Shown here: piece by piece, positions 1,201 to 62,296 of the stretch | How the letters are laid out: every line of letters begins with the position of its first letter | How positions within the stretch are numbered: the first letter of the stretch is position 1 | The notes under the pieces: generated by a model | Seen by the model: the letters and a program-made list of their open reading frames with translations, nothing else | Databases searched by the model: none | Told to the model about the DNA's origin: nothing | Made by a program: the position numbers and the translations under genes | From: Isurus oxyrinchus | Lineage: Eukaryota | Direction of reading: 5' to 3' | Assembly (NCBI GenBank): GCA_026770705.1 | Contig: JANJGN010000026.1 | Span: 32,302,001 to 32,366,000 of the forward strand | DNA: 64,000 nt

Positions 1201-2134
1201 ACTGCACAATGTGGAGATTGGTTGGGGTGGAAATAGTAAAGGTAAAACAGCAAGATGGTGGGAACAGTAATAATGCAAAAATTCTTTAGAGAACAATTAG
1301 CATGGGTGCCTTTTCCGATGTTGTGACTTGTTCTGCCTGCATCCCACATTTATGTTCATAAACTACAGATCTCTCTTATCTTGCAGCTGTTTAAATTAAA
1401 GCATTTAACTCCTATTTCCAGGGCCTAGTGTGATGAAGTAAGGGAATATACTAATGCATTATAAACAGAAAACAATTACATAAATAACTCAGACAGGGTC
1501 TAGTGTTACAGAAACAGAGACATGGACTAGAGCAGTAACAATGAATCAGGCCCAGCATAATATGAGCAGAGACATGGCGAAGTGCAACAATATTGACACC
1601 CAAGTCCTGAAGTCCCACAGAACCAGATAAGATATGGGTGGAGATACGTCTTGGTGATTTCCACTTATTGCCCTCACTCAGCTGATGAACATGTACTCCT
1701 TCATTTTTAGCACTGCTTGGAAGAAACACTGAAGGTAGCAAGGGCAATGAATGTGCCGTGGATTTGCAAAGTCAATTACCATTTGACAGGACCTCTAGTG
1801 ACCAAGCTGGATGAGTCTTGAATGATGTGTCTGCCAGACTGGACCTGCCACAGATTGTGATAGGAAAACTTTACCTGATCTCCGGCCCGTCACACTATTA
1901 ATATAGGTAGAGTGACACGTGCGCTGTCCTTGCAGAAACCAAGGCTGCTGTTCACATTGAGCACATTCTCCATTGTGTTCTGGGGCACTGTCACTGTGCT
2001 AAACGGGATACATTCAGAACAGATCTAGCAGCTCAAAACTTGGCATTTACAAGATGCTGGTGGCCATCAGCAGCAGATTAATTGCATTCAATCACATCCT
2101 GTAATCTCATGGACCAGAATATCCCTCACTCACA

Positions 2135-2830
2135 CCTTGGTGTGCCTGTCCACAGATCCATGAAGGTAGCAGGGAAGGGAGATAAGGTTGTTAAGAAGGC
2201 ATATGGGGTACATGCTTTTATTAGCCGAGGTGTAACATACCAGAGCAGGGAGGTTATGTTGGAACTGCATAAAATACTGCTTAGGCCGCAGCTGGAGTTC
2301 TGCGTGCAGTTACCAAACTATAGGAAGGATGTGATTTCACTGGAGAAGGTGCAGAAGAGATTTGCCAGGATGCTGCCTTGGCCGGAGGATCTGAGCTATG
2401 AGGAAATGTTGAATAGGCTGGCGTTGTTTGGTTTGGAGCAGGGAAGGTTGAGAATGGACCTGATAGGGGTGTGGAAGGCTATAAGGGGCATAGATGGAGT
2501 GGATAGCAAGGCACTTATTTCCCTTAGTAAAAGGGTCAATAACCAGGGTGCACAGATTTAAAGTAAGAGGTAGAAGGCTAAGAGGGGATTTGAGGATAAT
2601 ATTTTTCACCCAGAGGGTGGTGGGAGCCTGGAACACACTGCCTGAAAGGGTGGTTGAGTCAGAAATTCTCGTAACATTTTAGAAGTATTCAGATATTCAC
2701 GCATATTACTGTAGCCTCTAGGGCTAAGGCCAAGCACTAGACAATGGGATTAGTGTCGGCAGATCTTTGTTGACCTGCGGGGACACGGTGGGCCAATTGG
2801 CCTCCTTCTGTGGAGTAAACATCTACAAGT
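2135..2830 (+). mobile_element. CR1 LINE 3' fragment
   Basis: ORF 2082..2561 (LGVPVHRSMK..KVVKKAYG..LRPQLEFCVQ..LEKVQKRFARM) and following FFTQRVVGAWNTLPE. Confidence 0.9.
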
Positions 2831-2859
2831 CTCTGAGCCTAACGTCCAGGCTGGGGACA

Positions 2860-3365
2860 ATGAGGAATGTAGAACCACAGGTCAGAAGCAACACCAGGCA
2901 TACCTGAAAATGATGAACCAAAGTGTGAAGCAAGAACACCGTAAATAATGGACAACAGATCAAAACGGTCCCCTTGCCTCTCATTGTCTACTCTTGACCA
3001 TCAATAAAGTGATTGAAGATGTCGCCGATCTGCTCACCAAGGCTCAGACTGGATCCACCCGGATCAGTCAGCTTCAAAGCTCATTGTAAACTTAGTCTGA
3101 ACATGAAAAAGAGAGCTAACTCCCGGCGATAATGTACGAGTGTTTTAGCAATTTGTGTCAAAGTAGAGTTTGACTGAGTGCATCATAAAGAAGCCTTGAA
3201 AGGAGTCACCGCAATGGGAATCAGGAGAAGGCTCTCCACTGATTGGAGTCACACCGAGCACACATGAAGATGTTGTGGTTGTTGGAGACCAATCATCTCA
3301 GCGCCAGGACATCATTCCAGGAGTCCGTCAGAGAAATGTCCTTAGCCCAACCATCTTGACTTACA
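2860..3365 (+). mobile_element. Degenerate CR1-like LINE (second family) RT fragment
   Basis: Similar to the 40045-41430 and 54385-55940 copies (..GTTGTTGGAGACCAATCATCTCAG..CAGGAGT..CTTAGCCCAACCATCTT). Confidence 0.6.
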
Positions 3366-3427
3366 ATATTGTCTCTCCATCTCACAGACACATGGCGTAA
3401 TGCAGCTATAATTTAAACAGGAGCACA

Positions 3428-3566
3428 GATAAAAGTAAAATACAGCGGATGCTGGAAATCTGAAATTAAAACAGAAAATGCTGGAAAAACACCGCAGGTC
3501 TGACAGCATCTGTGGAGAGAGAAACAGAGTTAAATTTTCGAGTCAGTATGACTCTTCTTCAGAGGC
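3428..3566 (-). mobile_element. Short Penelope-like/non-autonomous element with hammerhead-like core
   Basis: Minus strand reads CTGAAGA-A-GAGTC-ATACT-GACTC-GAAA followed by the CAGATGCTGTCAGACCTGC..TTTTTCCAGCATTTTCTG tail shared with the other copies. Confidence 0.6.
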
Positions 3567-3809
3567 ATAGTCTAGTGTCGTAGTTACAATGACCTGGTCT
3601 GGTATAATATATATATTGTCAAGATCTAATATGATATAAATGGAAACAGGGTCCAGTGCAATACAAACGGAAAAGGCTTCTAGTGGAATATTAATGAGTA
3701 ATGGTCTATTTTGATACAAACAGAGGTTTGATCTAGTACAATGGAAATGAGGTAGTGCCGAGTGCATTCATAATCGAAACAGAATCCTGTATAACATGGG
3801 AGAGATGAT

Positions 3810-4370
3810 CGTACAGTGGGGACCTCACTGGATTAGAAACTCAGAGATTAGTAACCGACACCTTTGCTCCGGGGATAGGGGTTTGAATCCCGTTATGGGT
3901 CCCGCATGTAAAATTTAAATTCAATTAATAAATCTGGAATTGAAAGCTCGTCTCAATAATGGTGACCAAGAAACTAAAATCGATCATCTTAAGCATCTAT
4001 CTGGTTCACTGATGTCCTTTAGGGAAGGAAATCTGCCGTCCTTACCTCGTCTGGCCTACAATATTTTTGTTCATGAGAACGGGGATAACATTGGCTCGGC
4101 CAGCATTTATTGACATCGCTAATTTCCCTTGAGAACACTGTGGCTCATTAGGCTATGTAAGTGTGAACCAAATTGTTGTGGATCTGGAGTCATATATAGT
4201 CCAGACCAGGTGAAGTTAGTGAGCCAGATGGGCTTTTATGACAATGGTTTCATGGTCATCATTAGACTTTTGATTTCAAATTTCACCATCTGCCGTGGTG
4301 GGATTCAAACCCAGATCCCAAGCCATTTAATAGCCCAGTGAGGATACCACTACACTACCGCCTCCCATAC
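3810..4370. mobile_element. Two tRNA-derived SINE fragments, opposite orientations
   Basis: GGTTTGAATCCC B-box, CATCTGGTTCACTGATGTCCTTTAGGGAAGGAAATCTG body shared with 8128-8490 and 62297-62650; second copy inverted. Confidence 0.7.
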
Positions 4371-9470: not shown

Positions 9471-10370
9471 TTTAATTTTTGATGATTTCGATTATATAAC
9501 AGACCCTCTCATAGCTCCCTATGAGTGGAGAAATGACCAGTTCATGACCTCTTTCAGTGGAAAATAAAGCATTTATTCTTGTGATATTGTGTAATATGCC
9601 GCAAAGCCCTGATACGCTGCATTCCCAATACTAGTGAATGGCAGACAGCCGGTATCCAAGTAAATTACCAACAATGATTTGGATGCTGAAAGATAACTTT
9701 GCTGATTTCCGTGTCCGTTCTGATTCATTAATTTCTGTGTGTCAAAAGTTGTAAATTTTATGTTTCTCCGTCAACTCACTGTTTGATTATCAGGCAGGTT
9801 GGCTTCTTTTACCGCTAATTTTCACATGGCTGTCTTAGGGTCAGGAGCAGTTCGACAAATGCAAGGAGAGACGTTGTATAATGTGAGAAGATTCTTCTTA
9901 TCTCCGGACCCAAATTGTGCAGCAATAGCCACCCACACAGTAAATAGAATCACTTTGTTCATCCCCGCATTTAGTTACATAAATCAATATCAATTCCCAT
10001 GACTGATGAAACTTAATTACTGTAAGGAGATAGAGACCCGGAGTCGCTGCAAAACAGACTGACAGTCCCTTTATTCCTTGATGATGTAATTTATTTTTTT
10101 AGGTTCAACCCCTTGTGAAATAGTGTAGAAATAAATGGGCTTAATTTTCAATGGAATTAGTTTTTTTTATTAACAGATGTTCAACTGAAATTTCACTATT
10201 AGAATCTCGGGAGACATTACAGTGAATCCATTCAGCCATACAGATAAAATGTCCACTTTTAACAATAACCTGTTGTAAATATCTGAGTCCATTCTGTTGG
10301 GGATATGGAAGGGAGGGCGTGGATCCAGTCGCCGCCGCCACCAGGGTATTAACAGGCGGCGCCTGGAAAC

Positions 10371-10397
10371 CCGCCCCCTTCTGCCGGGTATTTAAAT
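10371..10397 (+). promoter_or_regulatory. Putative VH promoter: GC box plus TATA-like element
   Basis: CCGCCC at 10371-10376 and TATTTAAAT at 10389-10397, ~80-90 nt upstream of the leader ATGs. Confidence 0.6.
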
Positions 10398-10475
10398 GCC
10401 GCTCACTGGGATCGGAATCCAACAGTCCGGCAGCTGGTTTGTTCACTGAGTTGTGTACAGAACCATTTTCCCCAA

Positions 10476-10533
10476 ATGACCAGAAGGATGAGGTCGGCGA
10501 TTTCTCTCAGTTTGTTGCTGACTTCCTTATCCC
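10476..10533 (+). CDS. IGHV: Ig heavy-chain leader exon (MTRR)MRSAISLSLLLTSLS
   Basis: In-frame ATGs at 10476 and 10488, hydrophobic signal peptide, phase-1 donor C|GTGAGT at 10533/10534. Confidence 0.92.
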
Positions 10534-10660
10534 GTGAGTAGTTTTATTGTCCAAGTCTCTCACTGTTACTTTCTCAGTGTTAGCCTCTCTCTGGAATGTG
10601 ACAGGGTCAGGAATCATTTCACCAGGATTAATCCTCGGGGTTTTTGATATGTTTTTACAG

Positions 10661-10966
10661 GTGTCCAGTCGGATGTTGTGTTCACTCAGCCAGAGGCACA
10701 GACAGGGCGTCCCGGAGGCTCCCTGAGACTGACCTGTGAAACCAGTGGGATCACGCTTAGTAAAACTTACATGTACTGGGTCCGACAGGTTCCCGAAAAC
10801 GGACTGGAGTGTCTTCTTGAGTACTATAGCTAGTCAAGCTATACCTACGCCCCAGCAATTAAGAATCGATTTACGGCGTCCAAAGACACTTCAACGAACA
10901 TCTTCTCCTTGGACATGACGAACCTGAAGATTGAAGACACCGCCATCTATTACTGTGCAAGAGACA
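10661..10966 (+). pseudogene. IGHV: IgM-type VH exon with in-frame stop
   Basis: Acceptor TTTTTACAG; translates [100 protein letters not shown]; both Cys and the FR2 Trp present; TAG at 10831-10833. Confidence 0.95.
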
Positions 10967-11005
10967 CACAGCGAGAGGAACCAGGGCTGGACCCGAACAA
11001 GAACA
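10967..11005 (+). other. VH recombination signal sequence, 23-bp spacer
   Basis: Heptamer CACAGCG 10967-10973, 23-nt spacer, nonamer ACAAGAACA 10997-11005. Confidence 0.93.
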
Positions 11006-11364
11006 GTTCGAGAGGAACTCAGCAACTTCCATCATAACCTGACGGTCAGTGCTTGATTTAACTGTAATGATCCGAACCAGACAATGAACCGCTTCTGACA
11101 AAAGTACAACAGCAAATTTAGTAAAACCTAACAAACCAATCGATATAATGAGCTGAGCTTTTGGCTGTGTTTAATTTATATTTACTGTTAACAGCTTCCA
11201 TAAATACAGACCTGGATATAATGCTCATGTTGCTATGTCTAATACTTGGAGCGTGTCTCCTTTCGTTTCCTTTAGTAAATTGTTGCATTAGTTCTAAATT
11301 AGATCAGAAGTAAACGTCTATTTGAAGTGAATAATGAGTGACCTATTGAACAGAGAGTGGGTGC

Positions 11365-11392
11365 AGTTTTAGTGCTGGTGTATTTCACAGTG
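11365..11392 (-). other. 12-bp-spacer RSS 5' of D
   Basis: Nonamer AGTTTTAGT 11365-11373, 12-nt spacer GCTGGTGTATTT, heptamer CACAGTG 11386-11392; ~360 bp after the V RSS, a normal shark V-D1 distance. Confidence 0.88.
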
Positions 11393-11455
11393 CGGGCACA
11401 AGTGCTCTCGATCGCGACTACTGGGGACAAGGGACCATGGTGACAGTGACTGCAC
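11393..11455 (+). CDS. IGHJ: Germline-joined D(D)-JH segment (GTSALDR-DYWGQGTMVTVTA)
   Basis: WGQG motif, phase-1 donor C|GTAAG at 11455/11456; only 23 nt between the D heptamer and the JH core, with no J-RSS or inter-D RSS. Confidence 0.9.
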
Positions 11456-12158
11456 GTAAGAAACATACATTTATTTAGTAACTGCTTTCCTTGAATTTTT
11501 GTTTTATAATGTCTATTTTGATAATTAATTCCTTCAGTGAAACGTGAGTTTGGTGGATTCTGTATTGAGATTTTTTAATACAGACGAGATAATTCATTCA
11601 CACAGACACAAACGCCAGTCTATTGATGAAATCATTGTTCAAACGCACTTTTTAAAGGACATATCCACCAACAGTTGTCCCTATCACATGATGACCCGAC
11701 AAACACACTAAGCAATATTCTTACTGAGAAAGTAATTTAAGTTACAGACGTGCCAAACCTTCCCACAACAAATAAACAAATAAGATGGGAACTCACATCC
11801 GAGCTTTTAAACTCAACATTCACAGTTTCCAAATAAGTAGCTATGAACCTCTATCGAAATCCACCATAATAGTCTCTAATAATAGATCGTACAAAATTGT
11901 TCGAAAATGAACTGACACTAAAGAAAATTTCCCATACCTTCCGACATGGGCTGCTCACGGAATGTCAAGGAACGACTGCTGTGGTAATAGTTACAGAGAT
12001 AGGTTGCTAAATGTCACGAACTTAACAATAGACATACATTAAAAATTAAATTAGAGATTACATTAATAGCTTAAGAAAGAAAAGTGAATACAAAAGAGCA
12101 GTAAGAAATCCTGGATTAATAAACAATCTAATTTATTTCGGGCGCTATACCCACGTAG

Positions 12159-12286
12159 ATTGCACAGATCGCATCTGGATTGAAGGTTCTGACGATGATA
12201 ACGGCAACATCTGGACAACCGCTTCCACATTCATCATCCTGTTCTTCCTGAGCATGTGCTACAGCACTGCCGTTACTCTGGTGAAG
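12159..12286 (+). CDS. Ig heavy-chain transmembrane exon TM1 (IgM-like)
   Basis: AG|AT phase-1 start; [42 protein letters not shown]; donor AAG|GTAA; open frame with the conserved Ig TM motif [14 protein letters not shown]..YS.AVTL. Confidence 0.92.
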
Positions 12287-12424
12287 GTAAAAAGATTCAA
12301 TCTGCTCACACTTCAAACTGACAGAAGCGGTTTGAAAAGTCTGTCAATGTTACAATGATTAAAACCCTAACATAAATGTCCCAGATCCTAAACATCTGCT
12401 TCATTATTTTATCTCCTTTTACAG

Positions 12425-12433
12425 ATCGAATGA
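12425..12433 (+). CDS. Ig TM2 exon (I-E-stop) followed by 3' UTR
   Basis: Strong polypyrimidine acceptor ATCTCCTTTTACAG|ATC GAA TGA, 138 nt after TM1. Confidence 0.75.
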   Translation: ME

Positions 12434-12836
12434 TCGGTTGAATTTTGGACACTAGATTTTCGTCAGCTCTTTATTGAGATCTCTGCATTACGAATTTAAA
12501 ATATGTCCTCTTGGTGACTCTCTATGTAAAATACCTTCAGCTTTTGATTCCGAATTTGTGACTAAGGCAATCATGAGGGTATTTCTGATTTACTGTTTGA
12601 AATGTGAGAGATAATTATGACTGTACTGTAACGGTTGCTTATAATTTCCCTGTAGTTTCAATTATCTGTAACTTTCGTCATTCCTCATTCACAATTATTC
12701 CCTTCCCTTTATGTTGAGCCCCTGTTTTCTCTTCCTGGTGCCTGTTACAGTTGTACATACAGATGGCAGCTCAGAGCGACTGTGTTCCGTTCTCAAAGTG
12801 GCTCACAGTCGTTACATTCACTTCAGTTCACTTTAA

Positions 12837-12879
12837 AATAAAATTTGTCTGTAAAATGTTCTCTGAAATTGTCAATAAA
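12837..12879 (+). terminator. Candidate polyadenylation signals for the membrane Ig transcript
   Basis: AATAAA at 12837-12842 and 12874-12879. Confidence 0.55.
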
Positions 12880-13294
12880 TCTTGAATGTGAAACGAGCTA
12901 TGACTTTGCTGAACTCCTTTCTCCCAAACCGAGAGACGCTCCCAGACAGGAATTTTTCACCAGTCCTGTCTGGGATGTGTTTGAACCCAAGGCCCTTCGG
13001 AGAAAGAGTCACTGCGCCACCCAGCGGCCCATCCGTGTAAAGAGATCTTTATCTTAGCTTTTTTATGGCAAACTCCAGAGGCAGAATGATTACACAGCGA
13101 GGAGAACCTCGTGATTTCACTCAATCTCTGGCCTGTCACAGTCACATGTCAGGTAATTGTAAACAGAAGGGATCTGCTTCTTCGGAGGCCGATGCAGGAC
13201 AGTATATGGAGGAAGAAAGTTTCCGTTACACTGTCTCATCAAACAGCCCCAGGGTCGGTGCAACAGATGTTCGATACAGAGTAAAGCTTTTTTT

Positions 13295-13775
13295 TCTCGT
13301 TATTCTTTCATGGGATGGGGTGTCACTGGCAAGGCCAGCATTTGTTTCTCATACTAATTGCCCTTGAACTGTTTGGCTTTCTCGGCCATTTCAGAAGGCC
13401 ATTAAGAATCAACTACATTACTGTGAGTCCGGAGTAACATATAGGCCAAGCCGGGTAAAGGTGGCAGATTTTCTTCCCTAAGGAAATTAGTGGTGTAGAT
13501 GGATCTTAAATGACAATCGATGATAGTTGCCATAGTTACCATTTCCGAGTGCAGCTTTAAATTTCAGATTTTATTAATTGAATTCACATTCCAGCAGCTG
13601 CCATGTTGGGAATTGAACCCAAGTCCCCAAAGCATTATCTTGGGCTCTCTCTCCCTTGTCCAATTAAACACTCATAACGCAGAGACGTCACAATCCACCT
13701 TCCCGAGGGCAATTCGGGATGAGTAACAAATGCTGGTCCAGCCAGCCACGCCCACATCCCATGAATGAATAATTA
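13295..13775. mobile_element. SINE (minus strand) plus short tail fragment (plus strand)
   Basis: Reverse complement of the SINE at 62297-62650; GCCAGCCACGCCCACATCCCATGAATGAATAA tail. Confidence 0.7.
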
Positions 13776-14720: not shown

Positions 14721-15867
14721 TCGCTCCACCTCCTCAGAGATTCCTTCAGACCCTCCCGGTCACGGGAATATCAGCAGAGATTTCTGTTCAGGCGCCAATA
14801 TCTTCTAACATTTTCCTTCTGATGCAGTGCCAGTTTTCCTTTAACACACCCTTTGTGAGGCAGCAGTCCAGAATAGATTTTAAATTTAAGTAGCAAGCAA
14901 GCAAGTTTACCGCAGCACCTACTCGACAGTGGAATTCCAAAGGCAATCCTCCACCTTTGGTTGCTGGACACAGCAGGCATCTGCTAAAGTGGATGGAGGC
15001 TTCCCCAGCGTTGTTTTAGACAGTCCTCTTGGGTTTTACATGGCCCACCAACATAGCCTTCCATTCCTCTTCATGTATGTTCCTCTATCTTCCATCATTC
15101 TATGTGCCTTTCAAAATTTACTTTTCCCATGATATAAAAATGTTTCATGTTGCAAATATGGCCAGTACCTTTAGGAAAATAAATACACTGCTTGGCCTTG
15201 CATACTGTACATACTAAGACCTCATCCATGTTTACTCAATAGCATTTAAAATACCTTTTTCCTCTAATTTCTTTTGATAATTTCAAACTTTCAGTCTATC
15301 TGACTCTAATTCAATTAAATTACACAGACAGAACCATCTATACACACACTCAGAAACCTACTTTACAATACACCACAATAATATAATGAAAAGATCTGTC
15401 AGTTTCACGAGACTACTGAACAGTCTGCTCTGTAAGTTTGGTCAACGATGGAGTCCTTGAGAGATGCCAGGTGGAATTCTGTCTGTGAAATATCAGCTCT
15501 AACTGAAAATATTGGTGATTATTGTTGGGTTGTCATTATGGCAGATTAATATGTTTTTATTGTGTTGATTTAATTGTTATTGTAACTGTTGCCCTTCTGT
15601 ACAGTTCGTGCTATATTGATTCCGAAATTATTCGACTCAGTTTTCTTACATTCCCAACTCAGAAATGCAATACATGTCCAGTTGCATAAAATAGATGGAC
15701 TTCACTTTAATTAGTCCACAGTTAGTAATGTTTGCTTGTTGATTTCATGAGAATGAAGCCTTGCCATCTCCCTAATCATCAGATGATGGCATCAGTCAAA
15801 ATTGGTTACAACCAATGACGATTACTATATTGTTATGGATGGTTAATTGGTATTTTGAATCAATTGA

Positions 15868-16265
15868 TTGTGTGCATCTGTCTGTCTGCACGTCTGTTCC
15901 TGTGTGTCTGGCTGTGTGTGTATCAATGTGTCTGTCTGTGTGTCAGTGTGTGCGCTTGTCTGTTTCTATGTGTGTGTCTGTCTGTGCGTGTGTGTCTGTG
16001 TGTCTGTGCCTTTGTGTTTGTGTGTGATCGTGTGTGTATGTACGTGTGTGTGCCTACCTCTGCCTTTGTGTGTGTGTTTGCCTGTGCATATTGTCTGTGT
16101 GCCTGTGTCTTTGTGTTTGTGGGGTCTGTGTGTGTGCATGTGTGTCTGTGTGTGTTTGTGTGTGTGTTTCTGTGTTTGTGTTTGTGTATGTGTTGGCCTG
16201 TCTGTTTTGTTTGTTTTTGTGTTTTGCATGTGTTTGTGCGTGTGGATGTGTTTGTGTATGTGTGG
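15868..16265 (+). repeat. Imperfect (TG)n microsatellite
   Basis: ~400 bp of GT-dinucleotide-rich sequence; source of the CV/HT-rich pseudo-ORFs. Confidence 0.95.
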
Positions 16266-16929
16266 ACCGAGATAGTCGGGGATTATAACAATTTGGATAT
16301 TTTAGCGAACCTTTTTATATCAGAAGACTGAACTCTTTAATTCAGGTAAGATACCAGTTATATAGTATCCACAAATGAAATGGAGCTTCATATGGTGTAA
16401 TGGTGTCCTCCAGTTCTATTAATACATTCAGAGAATGAATTTCTATTCGCTGCTTTGAATCGTAGATTTCTCAGGAATTTGGTGTACTACGCAGTTGAAT
16501 TATTTTTATTCTCGTTTTATTTGAAATTAATATTTATATGACTGTTTGTGTGGGAACTTACCGGATAACAGCAGGGCTGACAACGTTTGGGGAACATTTC
16601 CATCAGATCAAGGAACACAACCCGGAACTGTGTCAGCAATGGGAGGGTGAGGAAGAGACTTTGGCCGTTGTTGGGTGATGTCAAACCACCAACTTTTCTG
16701 CTAATGTCAGAACGCACTCACCATTTATGCCACAAAGATGGGGTACAGCAAAGGAATCAAGGGCTTTAGGGATCGGCCGGGAAATTGGTGTTGAGGCCCA
16801 GGATCCGCCGTGATCTTATGAAGTAACTGAGCAGGCTCGACGTGCCTTTTGGCAGGCTCCTGGTCGGATTTCTTATGTTCTCAATCACTGCTGATACCAG
16901 TCAAGACTATGACGTGCTTATAGCATTGT

Positions 16930-40044: not shown

Positions 40045-41430
40045 TTTTATTCAATCATGGGATTTTGGCATCACTGACTAGGCCAGTTTTTATTGCCCAT
40101 CTCTAATTGCATTTGAGAAGGTGGTGGTGAGCTGCCTTCTTCAACTGCTGCAGTCCGTGTGGTGCAGGTACACCCACAGTGCTGTTCGGGAGGGAATTCC
40201 AGGATTTTGACCCTGTGACAGTGAAGGAACGGCGATATATTTCCAAGTCAAGATGGTGAATGACTTGGAAGGGAACTTACAGGTGGTGGTGTTCCAATTT
40301 ATCTGCTGCCCTTGATGGTAGTGGTCGTGGGTTTTGAAAGTGCTGTCCAAGGACCCTTGGTGAGTTTCTGCTGTGCACCTTGTAGATGGAACATGCTGCT
40401 GTTAGTGTGCATCGGTGGTGGAGTGAGTGAATGTTTGGGATGTGGTTCCAATTAAGAGCACTGTTTTGTCCTGGGTGCTGTCGAGCTTCTTGAGTGTTGT
40501 GGGAGCTGCACTCATCCAGGCAAGTAGGGAGCATTCCACCACACTCCTGACTTGTGCAGTGTAGATGGGGGACAGGCTTTGGGGCATCAGGAGGTGAGTT
40601 CCTCGCTGCAGGATTCCTAACCTCTTACCTGCTTTCGTAGCCACAGTATTTATATGGCTAGTCCAGTAAGTTTCTGGTCAATGGTAACCCCCAGGATGTT
40701 GATAGTGGGAGATTCAGTGATGGTGATGCCATTGAATGTCAATGGACAATGGTTAGATTCTGTCTTGTTGCAGATGGTCATTTGCTTGGCACTTGTGTGG
40801 TGCAAATGTTACTTGCCACTTGTCAGCCCAAGCCTGGATATTGTCCAGGTCTTGCTGCATTTGGACTTGGACTGCTTCAGTATCTAAGGAGCCATGAATG
40901 GTGCTGAACATTGTGCAATCATCAGCGAGCATCCTCACTTCTGATCTTATGATGGAAGGGAGGTCAGTGATGAAACAGCTGAAGATGGTTGTGCTGAGAA
41001 CACTATGCTGAGGAACTCCAGCAGTGATGTCCTGGAGTTGTGATGACTGACCTCTAACAACCACAACCATCTTCCTATGTGCTAGGTATGACTCCAACCA
41101 GCGAAGAGTTTTCCACCTGGTTCCCATTGACTCCAGTTTTGCTCGGGCTCCTTGATGCCACACTCAGTCAAATGTGGCCTTGATGTTAAGTGCAGTCACT
41201 GTCACCTCACCGTGGGAGTTCAGTGTTTTGTCAATGTTTGACCAAGGCTGTTATGAGGTCGGGAGCTGAGTGAACTTGGCGGAACCCAAACTGGGTGTCA
41301 GTGAGCAGGTTATTCCTGAGCAAATGCAGCTTCATAGCTCTATTGATGATCCCTTCCATTACTTCACTGATGACTGAGAGTAGACCGATGAGGCAGTAAT
41401 TGGCTGGGATGGATTTGTCCAGCTTTTCCT
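40045..41430 (-). mobile_element. CR1-like LINE (second family) RT region
   Basis: WLESYLAHRKMVVVV..ITAGVPQHSVL..MLADDCTM; QFGFRQVHSAPDLI. Confidence 0.9.
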
Positions 41431-43192: not shown

Positions 43193-43669
43193 ATGGAGAA
43201 ACCGTGGAAATGTGGGGACTGTGGGAAGAGATTCAGTTGTCCATCCCACCTAGAAACTCATCGACGCACTCACACTGGGGAGAGACCATTCATCTGTTCC
43301 GTGTGTGGGAAGGGATTTACTCAGCCATCCAGCCTCATGTCACACCAGCGAATTCACACTGAGGAGAAACCTTTTAAATGTTCTGACTGTGGAAGAAGCT
43401 TTAGGAGCTCCGGCTGTTTAATTCAACATCAGGGACTTCACACAGGGGAGAGACCATTCACCTGCTCCACGTGTGGGAAGAGATTCAGCCATCCATCCAC
43501 CCTGCAGAGACACCACCAAGTTCACACTGGGGAGAGGCCATTCCTCTGCTCCAAGTGTGGGAAGGGATTCACTCAGTCATCCCACCTGCTGAGACACCAG
43601 CAAGTCCATAAGTCACTTTTGGAGTTTGATTCTGCTGATATTGCTGCTGATAATCACATCCAGGACTGA
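43193..43669 (+). CDS. C2H2 zinc-finger protein B, 5 intact fingers (exon from acceptor at 42839; upstream fingers decayed)
   Basis: 158-aa ORF with five CxxC..HxxxH units and TGERPF/TEEKPF linkers. Confidence 0.75.
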   Translation: MEKPWKCGDCGKRFSCPSHLETHRRTHTGERPFICSVCGKGFTQPSSLMSHQRIHTEEKPFKCSDCGRSFRSSGCLIQHQGLHTGERPFTCSTCGKRFSHPSTLQRHHQVHTGERPFLCSKCGKGFTQSSHLLRHQQVHKSLLEFDSADIAADNHIQD

Positions 43670-50233: not shown

Positions 50234-51282
50234 TCACTGTTGTAACTTGTGAGCTCGCTGGTGTCTCAGCAGGTTAGATGATTGAGTAAATCCCTTTCCA
50301 TAATCGGAGCAGGTGAATGGCCTCTCCCCGGTGTGAACTCGCTGGTGTCTCAGCAGGTTGGATGACTGAGTGAATTTCTTCCCACAATTGGAGCAGATGA
50401 ACAGCCTCACCCCACTGTGAACCCTCACTGGTGTCTAAGCAATGCAGATGACTCAGTGAAACACTTCCCACACTCAGAGCAGGTGAATGGCCTCTCCCAA
50501 GTGTGAACTCACTGGTGTCTCAGCAGGGTGTATGACTGAGTGAATTCCTCTCCGCACTCAGAGCAGGTGAACGGCCTCTCTCCAGTGTGAGTGCGCTGGT
50601 GTACAGCAAGGTGAGATGATCGTCTGAACCCAGTCCCATAGTTACAGCACCTGAACGGTCTCTCATCAGTGTGAACTTGTTGATGGTACATCAGTTCCTG
50701 AGAACTTTTATAATACTTCCCGCAGTCCAGACATTTAAAAGGTCTGTCATCGGTGTGAACTCTTTGGTGTGTCATCAGGTTGGAAGAATTAATGAATCCC
50801 TTCCCACACACAGAGCAGGTGAACGGTCTCTCCTTAGTGTGAACTCGATGGTGTGTCCGCAGGGTGTATGAGTGAGTGAATCCCTTCCCACACACAGAGC
50901 AGGTGAACGGTCTCTCCCTAGTGTGAACTCGATGGTGTGTTCGCAGAGTGGATGACTGAGCGAATCCCAATCCACATACAGAGCAGGTGAAAGGCCTCTC
51001 CCCAGTGTGAACTCGCTGGTGTGTCAGCAGAGTAGATGACTTAGTGAACCCCATTCCACATACAGAGCAGGTGAATGGCCTCTCTCCAGTGTGTACTTGC
51101 TGATGAGTTTCCAGTTCTGATGGGTAATTAAATCCCTTCCCACAATCGCCATATTTCCACGGTTTCTCCCTGTTGTGACTGCATATATGTTTTGACAGGC
51201 CAGATGATTGGTTGAAGCTTTGACCAAACACAGAACACATGTACACTTTCTCCCCACTGTGAATGGTGCTTGTTCCTTCCAT
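50234..51282 (-). pseudogene. C2H2 zinc-finger gene C, decaying (~12 finger units, 5 intact in the main ORF)
   Basis: ATG at 51282; C>Y/F substitutions; CGA>TGA stop at 50509-50511, second stop and frameshift before the last two fingers. Confidence 0.85.
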
Positions 51283-51804
51283 GTTCAAATTCTGATGATA
51301 CTTATGATAAATTGGGCAACTCCATCAAATCCTGGTGTGATGTTTGGAAAATCCTCACTTTCTAATACCCTGTCAAATCGATTGAAAACAGGGAAAAAAA
51401 GAGTGAGAAAGAACCCACAAAAACACAAAGGCAGGTTGTGAAATTGAGCTGAATGAATCTGGTAATTTGTGAGGCCAGCATCAGGAAAAAGTGACCATGA
51501 AAACTGCTGGATTGTCATCAAAACCCAAGTGGTTCATTAATGTCCTTCAGGGAAGAGAAGGGTGGGTGTGGACCTACACACAACTCTGGCCTCTATGGGA
51601 GGGATGAAAGGGAGAAAGAGGTGGGAGAGCCAGGAAGTGAAGGAAAGAGATTCTTTATATCGACAACTTGACCAGAAATACAGAACCTCCTAAACCCTCA
51701 ACCTCCACCTCCTAGAAGGACCAGAGTAGCAGGGGACCAGGGTAGCAGGTGTATGTAAACACCATCACCTCCAAGTTCCCCTCCAAGTCACAGACCGTCC
51801 TGAC

Positions 51805-56679: not shown

Positions 56680-59600
56680 TGCCACCGCCTCCTCATGAGC
56701 CATTTATAAGCTGGACTGATGTTAAGCACACTCAGGATTGTGCAGCAAGTGCTGGCCAATCATGGAATCATATCTCAGAGTACTAGATCAAGGCAGGTTA
56801 ATGTGGAGCTGGAGAATTGCTGCAGGAGGGCTTCAGATTCATGGGGCATCAACACCAGTTCTGAGGAATGAGGCACCTGTTCAAGATGGATGGATTGCAC
56901 TTCAGCAGAGGTGTGACTCGGGCCCTTGTGCGTAGGTTTACTAGTGCAATGGGGGAAGGTTCAAATTACTTTTACAGGGTGAAGGACAAAATCATTGTTC
57001 CTTCCACTGGGGTCACTTAAAGAAACATTTCCCCAATTATTTAGTTTACTTTTCAATAGTTGTTACATTGAAGTCTGGTGTCAATTACACCAGAAAATGG
57101 AAATGACACACAACATGTCCCTGATATTCAGGACAGCCTAACAGTTCTCCCTCCCCACTCTCTGTATTATTATTTTATGGAAGCTGGACAGATTCCCACA
57201 CATGCCATTGGGCATTTTGCAATTGGATTCATTCATCCTGGTTTTGTCTGGCTCTGTCTTACTCTTTACTTCATGCTCTGTGACGGTTCCCGTGTATTTG
57301 GTTCCCGGCTGCAGGCAGCACCTAGTTTAGCTTTATTCGGTGCATCTGTGGTCTGTGATGTCACGTTCATAAAGCTTTTTTCACGCAGAGAAAACCATCC
57401 CAAGGTGTTTGGTAATGTGTAACAAATGGGAGAGGATTAATTTATGAACTCAGAGTAAAGGAGCCTCTAGGTAGCAGCAAACATAACATGATTGTATTTC
57501 GTATTTGGTTTGTCGGAGACAAGAGTGTGTCTAAGACAAGTGTTTTAAACTTCAATAAAGGCAATTACAAGGGTATGAAGATGGGCTGGTGAAAGTGAAC
57601 TGGGAAATTAGGTTAAGGGTAGGTCAGTAGAAATACAGCAGCAGACATTTAAGGAGATGTTTCATAGCGAAGGTAAATTCCGGTGAGAAAGAAAGACTTT
57701 CGGAGAAGTATGTGCTGTCCATGGCTAACTAAAGAAGTTAAAGATAACAAATTGGAAAAAAAAGCTTACAATCTGCGAAGATTAGTAGCAGGTCATAAGG
57801 TCATACAAAATTTAAAAAGCAGCAAACAATGACTGAGAAAATGAGGGAGAAATTAGATTCTGAGAAGAATAACAGTAAGAGTTTCTACAAGTATTGAAAA
57901 AGGAAAAGAGTAACTAAAATGAGTGCTGGTCCTCTAGGGAGTGAGTCTGGAGAATTAATAATGGAAAATAAGGAAATGGCGCAAGTGTTGAACAAATTTT
58001 GTGTCTGTCTTCATTGCGAAAGAGACAACTAACATCCTAAGAATACTTGTAAATCAAGAGGTGAAAGGGAGGGAGGAACTTAAAATCACCAGGGAAAGGG
58101 GACTGAGAACACTATTAGAACAAAAGGCTGACAAGTTCACAGTACCTGATGGACTTCATCCTAGGGTCTTAAAAGAAGTGGCTGTGGAGATATTAGATGC
58201 ACTTGATATAATTTTCCAAAATTCCTTTGATTCTGGAAAGGTCCCATCTGATTGGAAAATAGCAAGTGCAACTCCTCCAATCAAGATTGGAGTGAGACAG
58301 AAAGCAGGAAAAGATAGACCAGTTAGCTTAACATCTGTCATGGGGAATAAAATCTAGGATCTATTATTAAGGAGGTTATAGCAAGGCACTTAGAAAATCT
58401 TAATGACATCAGGCAGAGTCAGCACAGTTTTGTAAAAGGGAAATCGTGTTTGGCTAATTAGAGTTCTTTGAGGAAGTAACAAACAACAAGAATAAAGGGG
58501 AACCTGTAGCTGTGATGTACTTGGATTTCTAACTGGCATTTGATAAGGTGCCACATCAAAGGTTATTACGCAAAATAAGAGTTCATGGTGAGGGGGTAAC
58601 ATGAGCATGGTCAGAGGATTAGTTATCTAACAGGAAGCAGAAAGAAGGGATAAATGGGTCATTTCTGGGTTGGCAAGATGTAACTATTGGAGCATCACTG
58701 GGATCAATGTTAGGGTCTCAACTATTTACAATCTATATCAATGACTTGGATGAAGGGACTGAATATTTGGTTGCTAAATTTGTTGATGACGTAGGTAGGA
58801 AAGTAAGTAGTGAAGAGGACATAAGGAGTCTGCAAAGGGATGTAGATAGGTTAAGTGAGCAGGAAAAAAATTGGCAGATGGAGTACAATGTGGGAAAATG
58901 TGAACTTGTCCACTTTGGCAGGAAGAATAGAAAAGCAGCATATTATTTAAATGGAGAGAGATTTCAGAACTCCACAGTACAGTGGGATCTGGGTGTCCTA
59001 ATATATGAATCACAAAGTCAGTACGCAGGTACAGCAAGTGATTAGGAAGACAAATGGAATGTTATCATTTATTCAAGGGGAATGGAATCGAAAAGTAGGG
59101 ATGTTTTGCTGTAGTTTACAGGATGTTGGTGAGACCACATCAGGAGTACAGTTTACAGTTTTGGTCTCCTTGCTAAAGAAAGAATATAATTGCATTCAGA
59201 GAAGTTCAGAGGAGGTGCACTGGACTGATTCCTGGGATGAAGGTGTCTTATAAGGAAAAGTTGGATAGGTTGTACCTGTATTCTTTGGCTTGAGGAGAAT
59301 CAGAAGTCTTATTGAAATATATCACATCTTGAGGGGATTGAACGGAGTGGATACTGAAAGGATGTTTCCCCTTATGGGAGAGAGTCTATGACAAGAACTA
59401 GGGGCACAGTTTAAAAATAAGGGTTTTCCATTTAAGGAAACAAGGAGGGTTGTTAGTCTCTGCAGCTCTCTTGCCCAGAGAGCAGTGGAGGTTGGGTTAT
59501 TGAATATTTTTAAGGATGAATTGGACAGATTCTTGATTGACAAGGAAGTCAAGCGGTATCACGTGTCAGCAAGAAAGTAGAGTTAAGGCTACAATCAGAT

Positions 59601-60836: not shown

Positions 60837-61958
60837 TTACTTGTGAATTCGCTGGTGTCTCATCAGGTTGGATGACTGTGTGAATCTCTTTCCACACTTG
60901 GGGCAGATGAATGGTCTCTCCCCAGTGTGAACTCGCTGATGTGTCAGTAGGGTGGATGACTGAGTGAATCCCTTCCCACAGTTGGGACAGGTGAACGGCT
61001 TCTCCCCGGTGTGAACTCGCTGGTGTACAGTGAGATCAGATGATGTCTTGAACCCAGTCCCACAGTGAGAGCACCTGAATGGTCTCTCGTCAGTGTGAAT
61101 ACGTTGATGGCGCATCAATTCCCCAGAACTTTTAAAACAGTTTCCGCAGTCCAGGCATTTAAAAGGTCTCTTATCAGTGTGAACACGCTGATGGGACATC
61201 AGCTCCCTGCAATTTTTATAGCACTTTCTGCATTCTGGGCAGTTGAAAGGTCTCTTATCAGTGTGAACACTCTGGTGATTCAGCAGGGTGGATAACTGAG
61301 TGAATCCCTTCCCACAGTCAGAGCAGGTGAAAGGTTTCTCTCCAGTGTGGACTCGCTGGTGTGTCAGCAGGTTGGATGACTGAGCGAATCCCTTCCCACA
61401 GTCAGAGCAAGTGAATGGCCTCTCCCCGGTGTGAACTCGCTGGTGCTCAGTGAGTTGAGATGACTGTCTGAATCCAGACCCACAATGAAAGCACCTGAAT
61501 GGTCTCTCGTCCGTGTGAACACGTTGATGGAGCATCAGGTCCCGGGAACTTTTAAAGCACTTCCCACAGTCTGAGCATTTAAAAGGTCTCTCGTCAGTGT
61601 GAACTCGCTGGTGTGTCAGCAAGTCAGATGATCGAGCGAATCCTTTTCCACACTTGGAGCAAGTAAATGGTCTCTCCCCAGTGTGAACTCGCTGGTGTCT
61701 CAGCAGGTTAGATGACTGAGCAAATCCCTTCCCACAGTCAGAGCAGGTGAATGGTCTCTCACCTCTGTGAACTCGCTGGTGTCTCAGCAGACTGGATGAC
61801 TGAGTGAATCCCTTCCCACATACGGAGCAGGTGAATGGCCTTTCTCCAGTGTGACTGCGTCGATGAGTTTCCAGATCAGATGGAAATCTGAATCCCTCCT
61901 CACAGTCTCCACATTTCCACAGTTTCTCTCCGATGTGAACGGTGCTTTTTCCTTCCAT
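60837..61958 (-). CDS. Intact C2H2 zinc-finger protein D, 13 tandem fingers (373 aa from first ATG)
   Basis: All 13 CxxC-x12-HxxxH units intact with TGERPF/TDERPF linkers; splice acceptor TTTCACAG at 62057-62064; frame is open from the acceptor. Confidence 0.92.
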
Positions 61959-62296
61959 GTTCAAAATCCGATGATATTCAGGTTTCAATAACTTGGGCGA
62001 CTGTCTCAGATTCTGATGCGATGTTTGGTTTGAGTTTCCTGACTGAAAAATTCTCCCTGTGAAATTGATTTAAAACAGAAAAAAGGGAGTGAGAGAGAAC
62101 CCACAGAAACACAAAGGCAGGTTGTGAAATTGAACTTAATGATTCTGGTAATTTTGGGGGCCAGAACTAGGAAAAAATTACCATGAAAGTTGTTGGATTT
62201 TTTGTAAAAACCCAACTGGTTCATTAATGTCCTTCAGGGAAGGGAACCTGCCTCCAGTCTGGGCTCCACAAGACTCTGGCCTCTATGAGAACACTA

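What the first reader, a model, noticed from the sequence alone, without database searches (positions are those of the whole stretch)
10476..12879. Constant-domain-less Ig heavy-chain gene: L-VH-(D)J spliced straight to TM exons
Seen: the JH donor (11455) is only 703 nt from a TM1 exon (12159), followed by TM2 and polyA signals. The intervening DNA is AT-rich with no recognisable C1-set exon or secretory tail. Both junctions are phase 1, so J>TM1 splicing is in frame (..[52 protein letters not shown]). Established: shark IgM clusters normally have a multi-kb J-C intron, CH1-CH4, a secretory tail and then TM exons; CH1 mediates BiP retention and light-chain pairing. Inference: this layout encodes a membrane-only, single-V-domain rearranging receptor on a short Cys-containing stalk with the CD79-association TM motif. 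This copy's V is dead, so it is either a deletion-derived relic or a decayed member of an undescribed C-less receptor family. The intact TM frame, splice sites and RSSs are compatible with either a recent loss or a family.
Basis: partly seen in the sequence, partly recalled or inferred. Interest (0 to 1): 0.9.

Follow-up and report, generated by a model that had tools for sequence, protein, structure and literature searches.

The report
Transcribed shark IgM gene lacking constant exons
A catshark antibody heavy-chain gene has lost all four constant-region exons, yet it is still transcribed and spliced from its J segment straight to the membrane anchor; it is probably a surviving relic, but it is cheap to test as a possible constant-less receptor.

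Summary
The layout is real and sits at the stated coordinates: leader, VH with a 23-RSS, a 12-RSS-flanked (D)J, a 703-nt intron, IgM-type TM1 and TM2, then poly(A) signals. Shark Cmu proteins used as probes hit only V, J and TM1 anywhere in the 64 kb. There are no Ns in the window.

It is not a misassembly. Independent contigs from a second individual's RNA and from a second, about 2% diverged organism's DNA tile J, intron and TM1.

An RNA run of the same organism covers only the stretch from promoter to poly(A) site. It shows spliced L-V and TM1-TM2 junctions. One contig ends exactly at the J donor and continues with the first 12 letters of TM1.

The V stop codon (TAG 10831-10833) reads TCG (Ser) in every other data set laid, so it looks private to the reference haplotype.

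The TM exons, the "IE" tail and the "MTRRMR" leader match a normal catshark IgM subfamily. The in-frame J-TM1 join follows automatically from the phase-1 rule for Ig exons.

I found no sign of a multi-copy family, of rearranged V-J transcripts or of purifying selection.

Best reading (about 0.6): an old internal deletion of Cmu1-4 in one IgM minilocus that is still transcriptionally alive. A functional V-stalk-TM receptor stays open (about 0.12-0.15). First-stage notes of this scan list other orphan IgH TM exons in this genome; I did not check them.

The parts
10389..10396 (+). TATA-like box (TATTTAAA), about 80 nt upstream of the ATG; no exact Ig octamer nearby
   Evidence: The RNA run X5 has no contigs upstream of 10428.
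10476..10533 (+). Leader exon (MTRRMRSAISLSLLLTSLS), phase-1 donor GTGAGT
   Evidence: The same MTRRMR leader occurs in S. torazame IgM model P0023. An L-V splice (10533 to 10661, GT..AG) is seen in RNA contigs of X5 and X20; these may include paralogues.
10661..10966 (+). VH exon, IgM type; Cys22, Trp36 and YYCAR present; FR2 reads GLEC instead of GLEW
   Evidence: V-set, both halves. tblastn gives 70% identity to bamboo-shark P0006 V, E 1.7e-36. Locus-specific RNA contigs cover 10716-10874 and 10845-10925.
10831..10833 (+). In-frame TAG in CDR2 of the reference sequence; reads TCG (Ser) in X1 (DNA, same organism), X5 (RNA, same organism) and X7 (DNA, second organism)
   Evidence: table 3, place 10832 A>C, other_depth = all_depth in all three runs.
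10967..11005 (+). V 23-RSS: heptamer CACAGCG, 23-nt spacer, nonamer ACAAGAACA (7/9)
11006..11364 (+). V-to-J intersegment, 37% GC, no D element and no further heptamer
   Evidence: Transcribed in germline form: X5 contig 10979-11455.
11365..11392 (+). J-side 12-RSS: nonamer AGTTTTAGT (7/9), 12-nt spacer, heptamer CACAGTG
11393..11455 (+). 63-nt JH-type coding segment (..GTSALDRDYWGQGTMVTVTA + C), long enough to be a germline-joined DJ; donor GTAAGA
   Evidence: The only exact WGQGT match in the window. An X5 contig ends at 11455 and continues with ATTGCACAGATC, which is 12159-12170 (table 7).
11456..12158 (+). J-TM1 intron, 703 nt, 34% GC, closed in all six frames, no C1-set or secretory-tail remnant; holds a high-copy repeat of about 43 nt at 11768-11811
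   Evidence: X5 contig 11426-12153 and X7 contig 11782-12212 tile it.
12159..12286 (+). IgM-type TM1 exon: (H)[42 protein letters not shown]
   Evidence: (E 1e-16 to S. torazame Cmu membrane forms).
12425..12433 (+). TM2 coding part (IE, stop), the same tail as S. torazame P0022 and P0023
   Evidence: TM1-TM2 splice in X5 RNA contig (joint 12284 to 12423, cut +2).
12434..12895 (+). 3' UTR with AATAAA at 12837 and 12874
   Evidence: The X5 contig reaches 12812, and there is no X5 depth beyond bin 12775-12885.

Best explanation
This is one IgM heavy-chain minilocus of a catshark that lost Cmu1-Cmu4 and the secretory tail. The loss was most likely a single internal deletion between the J-Cmu1 intron and the Cmu4-TM1 intron. 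The D segments are also gone or were joined to J in the germline.

Every Ig exon boundary is phase 1, so the J donor now splices in frame to TM1. The promoter, splice sites and poly(A) site still work. The unrearranged locus is transcribed from about the V promoter to the poly(A) signals and is spliced L-V, J-TM1 and TM1-TM2.

The layout also stands in the DNA of a second, about 2% diverged organism. So the deletion most likely predates their split, but no contig of that organism was shown crossing the J donor, and the species names are coded.

Shown:
- the layout and the absence of C exons;
- the contiguity of J, intron and TM1;
- transcription confined to the unit, and the three splice junctions;
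- the stop codon being absent from the other haplotypes sampled.

Inferred:
- the deletion origin;
- that the locus has no receptor function and persists as a neutral, still-active relic, with a loss-of-function allele segregating.
For: - No CH exon in 64 kb with four shark Cmu probes, and no Ns.
- Canonical shark clusters have J 6.3-6.8 kb from Cmu1 and segments about 400 bp apart (PMC2435157). Here V to J is about 420 bp and J to TM1 is 703 nt.
- The leader, TM1 and IE tail match normal S. torazame IgM models that do carry Cmu exons. The ancestor was therefore an ordinary cluster.
- Contigs of X5 (11426-12153) and X7 (11782-12212) tile J, intron and TM1.
- X5 depth is zero in the flanks 10000-10332 and 12886-13300 but present across the unit. 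L-V and TM1-TM2 joints have GT..AG ends. The loose end at 11455 equals the first 12 nt of TM1, a 4^-12 match by chance.
- For 'no function': the reference carries a TAG that other haplotypes lack. Divergence from organism B is about 1.9% in the V exon (4/215) against about 2.2% in non-coding parts (49/2215). RSS quality is only moderate. No variant copies of the intron appear in the DNA runs.
- Pseudogene IgM clusters are known in sharks (PMC2435157), and first-stage notes list other orphan IgH TM exons in this genome (unchecked).
Against: - Apart from the reference's TAG, every element is intact: leader, V framework, both RSSs, all six splice sites, the TM core motif and the poly(A) signals. 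No frameshift is listed in coding exons of organism B, against 8 indels in about 2.7 kb of non-coding sequence.
- This copy carries changes that could suit a chain without partners: W47C in the VH/VL interface and a new Cys in the membrane-proximal stalk.
- In X5, locus-specific V contigs (66-76) and the 3' UTR contig (78) are deeper than the V-J intersegment (30) and the intron (32), with no fixed joint. Diverse V-J rearrangements would give this pattern. The tool warns that contig depth cannot rank parts of a gene, so this is only a hint.
- The breakpoints of the supposed deletion could not be mapped.
Confidence: 0.6

Rival explanations
1. Functional constant-less receptor. After RAG-mediated V-to-(D)J joining, the locus encodes a type-I membrane protein of about 185 aa: a single VH domain, a 17-aa acidic Cys-containing stalk and the mu TM helix. 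It would reach the surface without a light chain, because there is no CH1 and so no BiP retention. It would signal through CD79, for example as an innate-like or developmental (pre-BCR-like) receptor.
For: - J-TM1 and TM1-TM2 splicing in RNA, and transcription confined to the unit.
- The layout also stands in a second organism's DNA.
- The stop codon is absent from three other data sets.
- A 23/12 RSS pair allows a direct V-J join.
- The TM core [23 protein letters not shown] is intact.
- W47C and the stalk Cys are derived in this copy.
- V and 3'UTR contigs are deeper than the intersegment and intron (weak).
Against: - No rearranged V-J contig or joint in RNA.
- A null allele is present in the reference.
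- V-exon divergence is about the same as neutral.
- Single locus with no paralogue found.
- No such protein in 1.8 billion representatives or in the length-matched search.
- No literature precedent.
- Intactness over about 1% divergence per lineage is expected by chance in roughly one lineage in three.
Confidence: 0.14
2. The locus itself is silent. The J-TM1 junction contig would come from aberrant skipping of Cmu1-4 in transcripts of a canonical IgM cluster, or from an unseen close paralogue.
For: - V, J and TM1 exons are shared at 93% identity or more with many paralogues; depths in DNA runs are several-fold above single copy in the V and TM1 bins.
- The junction contig has only 12 letters beyond J.
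- X5 contigs differ from the window by about 1%.
Against: - X5 contigs cover the locus-specific intersegment (10979-11455), the intron (11426-12153) and the 3'UTR (12423-12812), which are single-copy in the DNA runs. Nothing covers the flanks.
- The junction contig matches through base 11455 (C, giving His). The canonical exon upstream of TM1 ends in G, giving Asp, as the X20 loose end shows.
- The contig breaks at 11455/11426 are what a splice branch at this donor would produce in a k=31 graph; this is my inference.
- X1 DNA shows only the window's letters at the places where X5 differs (11378, 11585, 11593, 11799). X5 is therefore an allele, not a fixed paralogue.
Confidence: 0.05
3. Assembly artefact: the Cmu exons were collapsed or dropped between J and TM1.
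For: Ig clusters are repetitive and often misassembled. No single laid contig spans the whole stretch.
Against: - No Ns in the window.
- An independent RNA contig of another individual runs 11426-12153, and a DNA contig of a second organism runs 11782-12212. All 30 bins are covered in that organism.
- A spliced J-TM1 junction and a retained 703-nt intron are both seen.
Confidence: 0.02
4. The V and (D)J segments are kept as donors for TCR-delta/alpha trans-rearrangement or for gene conversion of other clusters, and the TM exons are mere passengers. IgH clusters lie near the TCR alpha/delta locus in elasmobranchs.
For: [quoted passage not shown]
- First-stage notes place V genes 21-29 kb upstream and an IgM cluster linked to TCR-type V segments 495 kb downstream (unchecked).
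Against: - The transcripts seen use the local J donor and the local TM exons.
- No TCR-type segment is in the 64-kb window.
- Nothing in the data shows joining to another locus.
Confidence: 0.04

Closest known systems
Canonical cartilaginous-fish IgM minilocus (VH-D1-D2-JH-Cmu1-4-TM1-TM2)
   Same: Split leader, IgM-type VH with 23-RSS, JH with 12-RSS, spacing of about 400 bp, mu-type TM1/TM2 and poly(A). The leader and tail are of the same subfamily as S. torazame P0022 and P0023.
   Different: No D1 or D2, no Cmu1-4, no secretory tail. J to TM1 is 703 nt, against a J-Cmu1 intron of 6.3-6.8 kb followed by four C exons.
Pseudogene and partial IgM clusters of sharks (nurse shark Groups 6-8, G2C)
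   Same: A member of the multi-cluster family carrying a disabling lesion. The reference allele has a stop in V.
   Different: Here the lesion is a clean removal of all C exons with every other signal intact. The locus is transcribed and spliced, and the V stop is not fixed. As far as the searched literature goes, no C-less, TM-retaining cluster is described.
IgM1gj (germline-joined nurse shark IgM lacking one C domain) and the bamboo-shark gene model P0006 (V-DJ-Cmu1-TM)
   Same: Shark IgM genes with germline joining and a reduced set of constant domains.
   Different: Those keep at least one C domain, and IgM1gj is secreted. This locus keeps none and can only give a membrane form. P0006 is an unverified gene model.
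Truncated mu chains in mammals (D-mu protein, heavy-chain-disease and engineered V/CH1-less mu)
   Same: Heavy chains lacking CH1 escape the need for a light chain and can signal through CD79. This is the mechanistic model for what a V-TM chain might do (my own knowledge, not tested here).
   Different: Those retain Cmu2-4 and arise somatically or by engineering. This is a germline gene without any C domain.
Teleost membrane IgM (TM1 spliced to Cmu3, skipping Cmu4)
   Same: Shows that the mu TM exons tolerate being spliced to a different upstream phase-1 exon.
   Different: Teleosts still keep three C domains, and the exon is skipped by splicing, not deleted.
IgNAR and camelid heavy-chain-only antibodies
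   Same: A single V domain acting without a light chain; substitution at the VH/VL interface (W47 in VHH, W47C here).
   Different: They have several C domains and secreted forms. This V is an ordinary IgM-type VH.

Membership tests
Shark IgM heavy-chain minilocus | Split leader plus IgM-type VH exon ending in YYCAR with a 23-RSS | tested here: met
Shark IgM heavy-chain minilocus | Two D segments flanked by RSSs between V and J | tested here: not met
   The only heptamers in 10955-11400 are those of the V RSS and the J RSS. The 63-nt J coding part may hold germline-joined D remnants; this is an inference.
Shark IgM heavy-chain minilocus | JH (..WGQGTMVTVT.) with a 12-RSS and a phase-1 donor | tested here: met
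Shark IgM heavy-chain minilocus | Four C1-set Cmu exons and a secretory tail downstream of J | tested here: not met
   tblastn of P0001, P0021-23 and P0026 against the whole window gives no CH hit. The intron is closed in all frames.
Shark IgM heavy-chain minilocus | mu-type TM1/TM2 exons with the conserved TM core | tested here: met
   76-80% identity to S. torazame mu TM, E 1e-16. The IE tail is shared. An X20 contig shows the canonical ..NRTVDKSS|D splice into a paralogous TM1.
Pseudogene (non-functional Ig cluster) | Fixed disabling mutation in coding sequence or signals | tested here: inconclusive
   TAG at 10831-10833 in the window, but TCG in X1, X5 and X7. All splice sites, RSSs and poly(A) signals are present. 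Loss of the C exons is disabling for an antibody, but not necessarily for a membrane protein.
Pseudogene (non-functional Ig cluster) | Neutral evolution (exon divergence equal to intron divergence) | tested here: inconclusive
   V exon 4/215 against non-coding 49/2215 differences to organism B. The numbers are too small, and the letters of most differences were not listed.
Rearranging antigen receptor gene (functional) | Somatic V-(D)-J joints in lymphocyte DNA or RNA | not testable with these tools
   Logan contigs do not keep diverse junctions. No V-J joint in X5. The one V-J joint (X7, 28 nt between) is in DNA, out of frame, and cannot be assigned to this locus.
Germline-joined Ig genes of cartilaginous fish | Adjacent segments fused in germline DNA with loss of the RSSs between them | tested here: inconclusive
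   V and J are not joined. D-J joining is suggested only by the missing D segments and the long J coding part.
TCR-associated Ig-like V / IgHV used by TCR delta | VH-like segment placed to rearrange to TCR D/J and splice to a TCR C | tested here: not met
   The J is JH-type and is spliced to mu TM1 in RNA. No TCR segment was found in the window.

The most novel reading that the evidence does not exclude
A germline-encoded, RAG-rearranging, membrane-only antigen receptor made of one VH domain on a short Cys-bearing stalk and the mu transmembrane helix. It would have no constant domain and no light chain. It would be kept in at least two catsharks and would signal through CD79, for example as an autonomous developmental or innate-like B-cell receptor.
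Probability: 0.12. Interest if true: 0.9.

Novelty: new variant of a known kind. Interest (0 to 1): 0.55.

Why it matters
If it is only a relic, it is still a useful natural experiment. It is a shark IgH minilocus without any C exon that keeps promoter activity, germline transcription and correct splicing. That places the control elements of the cluster outside the Cmu1-4 interval. It also shows how easily phase-1 exon architecture makes new domain combinations.

If rearranged V-J-TM messages exist and are selected for frame, it would be the first antigen-receptor chain without a constant domain. That would bear on what the minimal BCR is, on light-chain-independent signalling and on H-chain exclusion among shark miniloci.

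The question is now directly testable: a unique 3'UTR (12434-12812), a unique intron and a leader primer are enough.

Tried and rejected
The deletion breakpoints therefore could not be mapped. No other collection on hand holds shark genomic DNA.
- Looking for annotated or predicted V-J-TM proteins. The HMMER search of the TM1 exon against 1.84 billion representatives gave 20 hits, all ordinary mu/IgH membrane forms, fragments or fused models. A length-matched search with the TM part of P0006 (152-483 aa) gave only 4 known Cmu proteins. Both blanks are weak evidence.
- Literature: four full-text searches found no description of a C-less IgH cluster or of J-to-TM1 splicing in cartilaginous fish. 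The library lacks most subscription journals.
- The search of earlier findings by relatives gave nothing.
- A second copy in the window: none. The locus and intron match only themselves, and there is a single exact YYC and a single exact WGQGT motif.
No structure or complex prediction was run, because neither would separate relic from receptor.
- Rejected readings:
  - "The IE tail and acidic stalk are decay or novelty": both are normal for the subfamily.
  - "The in-frame join is evidence of design": it is automatic.
  - "Depth shows rearranged mRNA": the tool warns against ranking parts of a gene by contig depth.
Full report
**What is in the sequence**

The region reads as a compact immunoglobulin heavy-chain transcription unit.

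- A TATA-like box lies at 10389.
- The leader exon is 10476-10533 (MTRRMRSAISLSLLLTSLS, donor GTGAGT).
- A 127-nt intron follows.
- The VH exon is 10661-10966. It has Cys22, WVRQ and YYCAR. Its two halves match consecutive parts of Pfam V-set.
- The V carries a 23-RSS (CACAGCG-23-ACAAGAACA).
- The 359-nt intersegment holds no D element.
- A 12-RSS (AGTTTTAGT-12-CACAGTG) precedes a 63-nt JH-type segment ending ..DYWGQGTMVTVTA with donor GTAAGA at 11456.
- The intron is 703 nt, has 34% GC and is closed in all six frames.
- TM1 is 12159-12286 and TM2 is 12425-12433 (IE, stop).
- AATAAA stands at 12837 and 12874.

The V has an in-frame TAG at 10831-10833.

**No constant exon, and no gap**

I took the TM1 exon through all 1.84 billion representative proteins. 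The best hits are shark IgM membrane forms. With those as probes I ran tblastn on the whole window. The probes were bamboo-shark P0001 and, from a second search, three Scyliorhinus torazame Cmu proteins and one more.

- Only V (E 1.7e-36), J and TM1 (E about 1e-16) hit.
- Nothing else falls below E 0.05.
- The window has no Ns.
- The locus and its intron match nothing else in the window.

In nurse shark, segments lie about 400 bp apart and J is 6.3-6.8 kb from Cmu1 (PMC2435157). Here the V-J spacing is normal, but the J-C intron and four C exons are replaced by 703 nt.

**It descends from an ordinary IgM cluster**

Several features might look odd but are subfamily traits.

- S. torazame P0022 and P0023 end in ..VTLVKIE, as this gene does.
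- P0023 starts MTRRMRWAISLSLLLTFLS.
- The TM core [23 protein letters not shown] is intact.
- A contig of run X20 shows the normal splice ..NRTVDKSS|D into a paralogous TM1. The TM1 acceptor is therefore the usual Cmu4 partner, and it is phase 1.

J donors are phase 1 too, so removing whole C exons must leave J-TM1 in frame. The in-frame join is no sign of design.

Three Cys replacements are particular to this copy:

- W47C in FR2 (GLEC for GLEW);
- Ser to Cys in the stalk (CTD for STD);
- SMCYS in the helix, where relatives have S or F.

**Reads: the assembly holds**

I laid Logan contigs of four runs on 10000-13300.

- X1 (DNA, organism A) matches with zero differences over several contigs, so the window is from organism A.
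- X7 (DNA, organism B, about 2% diverged) covers all 30 bins. One of its contigs, 11782-12212, crosses from the intron into TM1.
- X5 (organism A, another haplotype, about 1% different) has a contig 11426-12153 running from J through the intron.

Together these leave no room for hidden C exons. The layout most likely predates the split of the two organisms, but no contig of organism B was shown crossing the J donor.

The species names are coded.

**Reads: it is transcribed and spliced as predicted**

X5 is RNA. It has GT..AG joints for L-V (10533 to 10661) and for TM1-TM2 (12286 to 12425 after the stated +2 shift). The latter sits in a 423-nt contig that runs on through 390 nt of this locus's 3'UTR.

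X5 has no depth in 10000-10332 or in 12886-13300. It covers the V exon, the intersegment (contig 10979-11455), the intron and the 3'UTR. The signal is therefore not DNA carry-over, and its limits match the promoter and the poly(A) signals.

One X5 contig ends exactly at 11455 and continues ATTGCACAGATC, the first 12 letters of TM1. The chance of such a match is about 6e-8. Its last matched base is the C that makes His, not the G of canonical upstream exons. The neighbouring contigs break at 11455 and restart at 11426. That is what a splice branch in a k=31 graph would give; this is my inference.

The germline intersegment is also transcribed, as is known for unrearranged shark clusters (PMC2435157).

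**The stop codon is not fixed**

At 10832 all contigs of X1, X5 and X7 read C, giving TCG (Ser). The X5 contig 10716-10874 is otherwise identical to the window. It overlaps a contig that carries the window's private C at 10895, so it belongs to this locus.

The TAG is therefore a derived allele of the reference haplotype, or a consensus error.

**Relic or receptor?**

For a relic:

- a null allele is segregating;
- V-exon divergence to organism B (4/215) is about equal to non-coding divergence (49/2215);
- the RSSs are only moderate;
- the intron has no variant copies in the DNA runs, and there is no second copy in the window;
- no V-J-TM protein turned up in two protein searches;
- no paper describes such a gene;
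- partial clusters are known in sharks, and first-stage notes report other orphan IgH TM exons in this genome (unchecked).

For a receptor:

- every signal is intact;
- no coding indel is listed in organism B, against eight non-coding ones;
- W47C and a stalk Cys are what a partnerless, dimerising chain might need;
- in X5, the V and 3'UTR contigs are about twice as deep as the intersegment and intron, without a fixed joint.

None of these reaches significance. By my rough estimate, intactness over about 1% divergence per lineage is expected by chance in about a third of lineages. The tool also warns that contig depth cannot rank parts of a gene.

I put about 0.6 on a transcriptionally alive deletion relic and about 0.12-0.15 on a functional V-stalk-TM receptor.

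**Limits**

- The reads tool allowed one call and gave contigs, not raw reads. Junction counts, strand, transcription start and rearranged junctions could not be seen.

Noticed in passing
window 10956-11414 (contig of run X7, organism B DNA): One DNA contig joins the V end (10956) to J (11414) with 28 other letters between (TCATGGCAGCCTAATGCATACTGGGGTG). This is a germline-joined VDJ somewhere in organism B. Read in the V frame it holds a TAA and puts J out of frame, so it is probably a germline-joined pseudogene. It cannot be assigned to this locus.
   Followed up: partly
protein P0006 (Chiloscyllium punctatum GCC37862.1): A bamboo-shark gene model reads leader-V-DJ-Cmu1 and then goes directly to mu TM1/TM2, without Cmu2-4. 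It is either another truncated IgM cluster or a modelling artefact. Its DNA could not be fetched.
   Followed up: partly
protein P0023 (Scyliorhinus torazame scyTo_0019762): This model has the same MTRRMR leader and KIE tail as the window gene. It jumps from the end of Cmu3 into the last third of Cmu4. Internal losses may be frequent in this IgM subfamily, or the model may be broken.
   Followed up: no
window 11768-11811: A stretch of about 43 nt inside the J-TM1 intron is high-copy in both DNA runs. Depth is 1500-3900 against about 200 for its neighbours, with loose ends on both sides. It is probably a fragment of an interspersed repeat.
   Followed up: no
window 33787-34268, 43193-43669, 50509-51288 (-), 60837-61988 (-): Four open frames with tandem C2H2 zinc fingers (TGERPF linkers). 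The Ig mini-gene sits beside a zinc-finger gene cluster interspersed with reverse-transcriptase fragments (for example 40753-41163, 58001-59045).
   Followed up: no
window 15855-16331: A TG/TGC-rich low-complexity tract that reads as a long Cys/Val-rich pseudo-ORF. It coincides with a strong swing in GC skew at 14-18 kb.
   Followed up: no
run X19 (coral metatranscriptome): A coral metatranscriptome run holds about 8% of the sampled words of this shark locus. This is likely cross-sample carry-over or a shared repeat.
   Followed up: no
window 11365-11385 (J-side RSS) in run X5: The X5 haplotype has a 1-nt deletion at 11371 in the nonamer and G>T at 11378 in the spacer. The J RSS is therefore polymorphic between individuals.
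   Followed up: no
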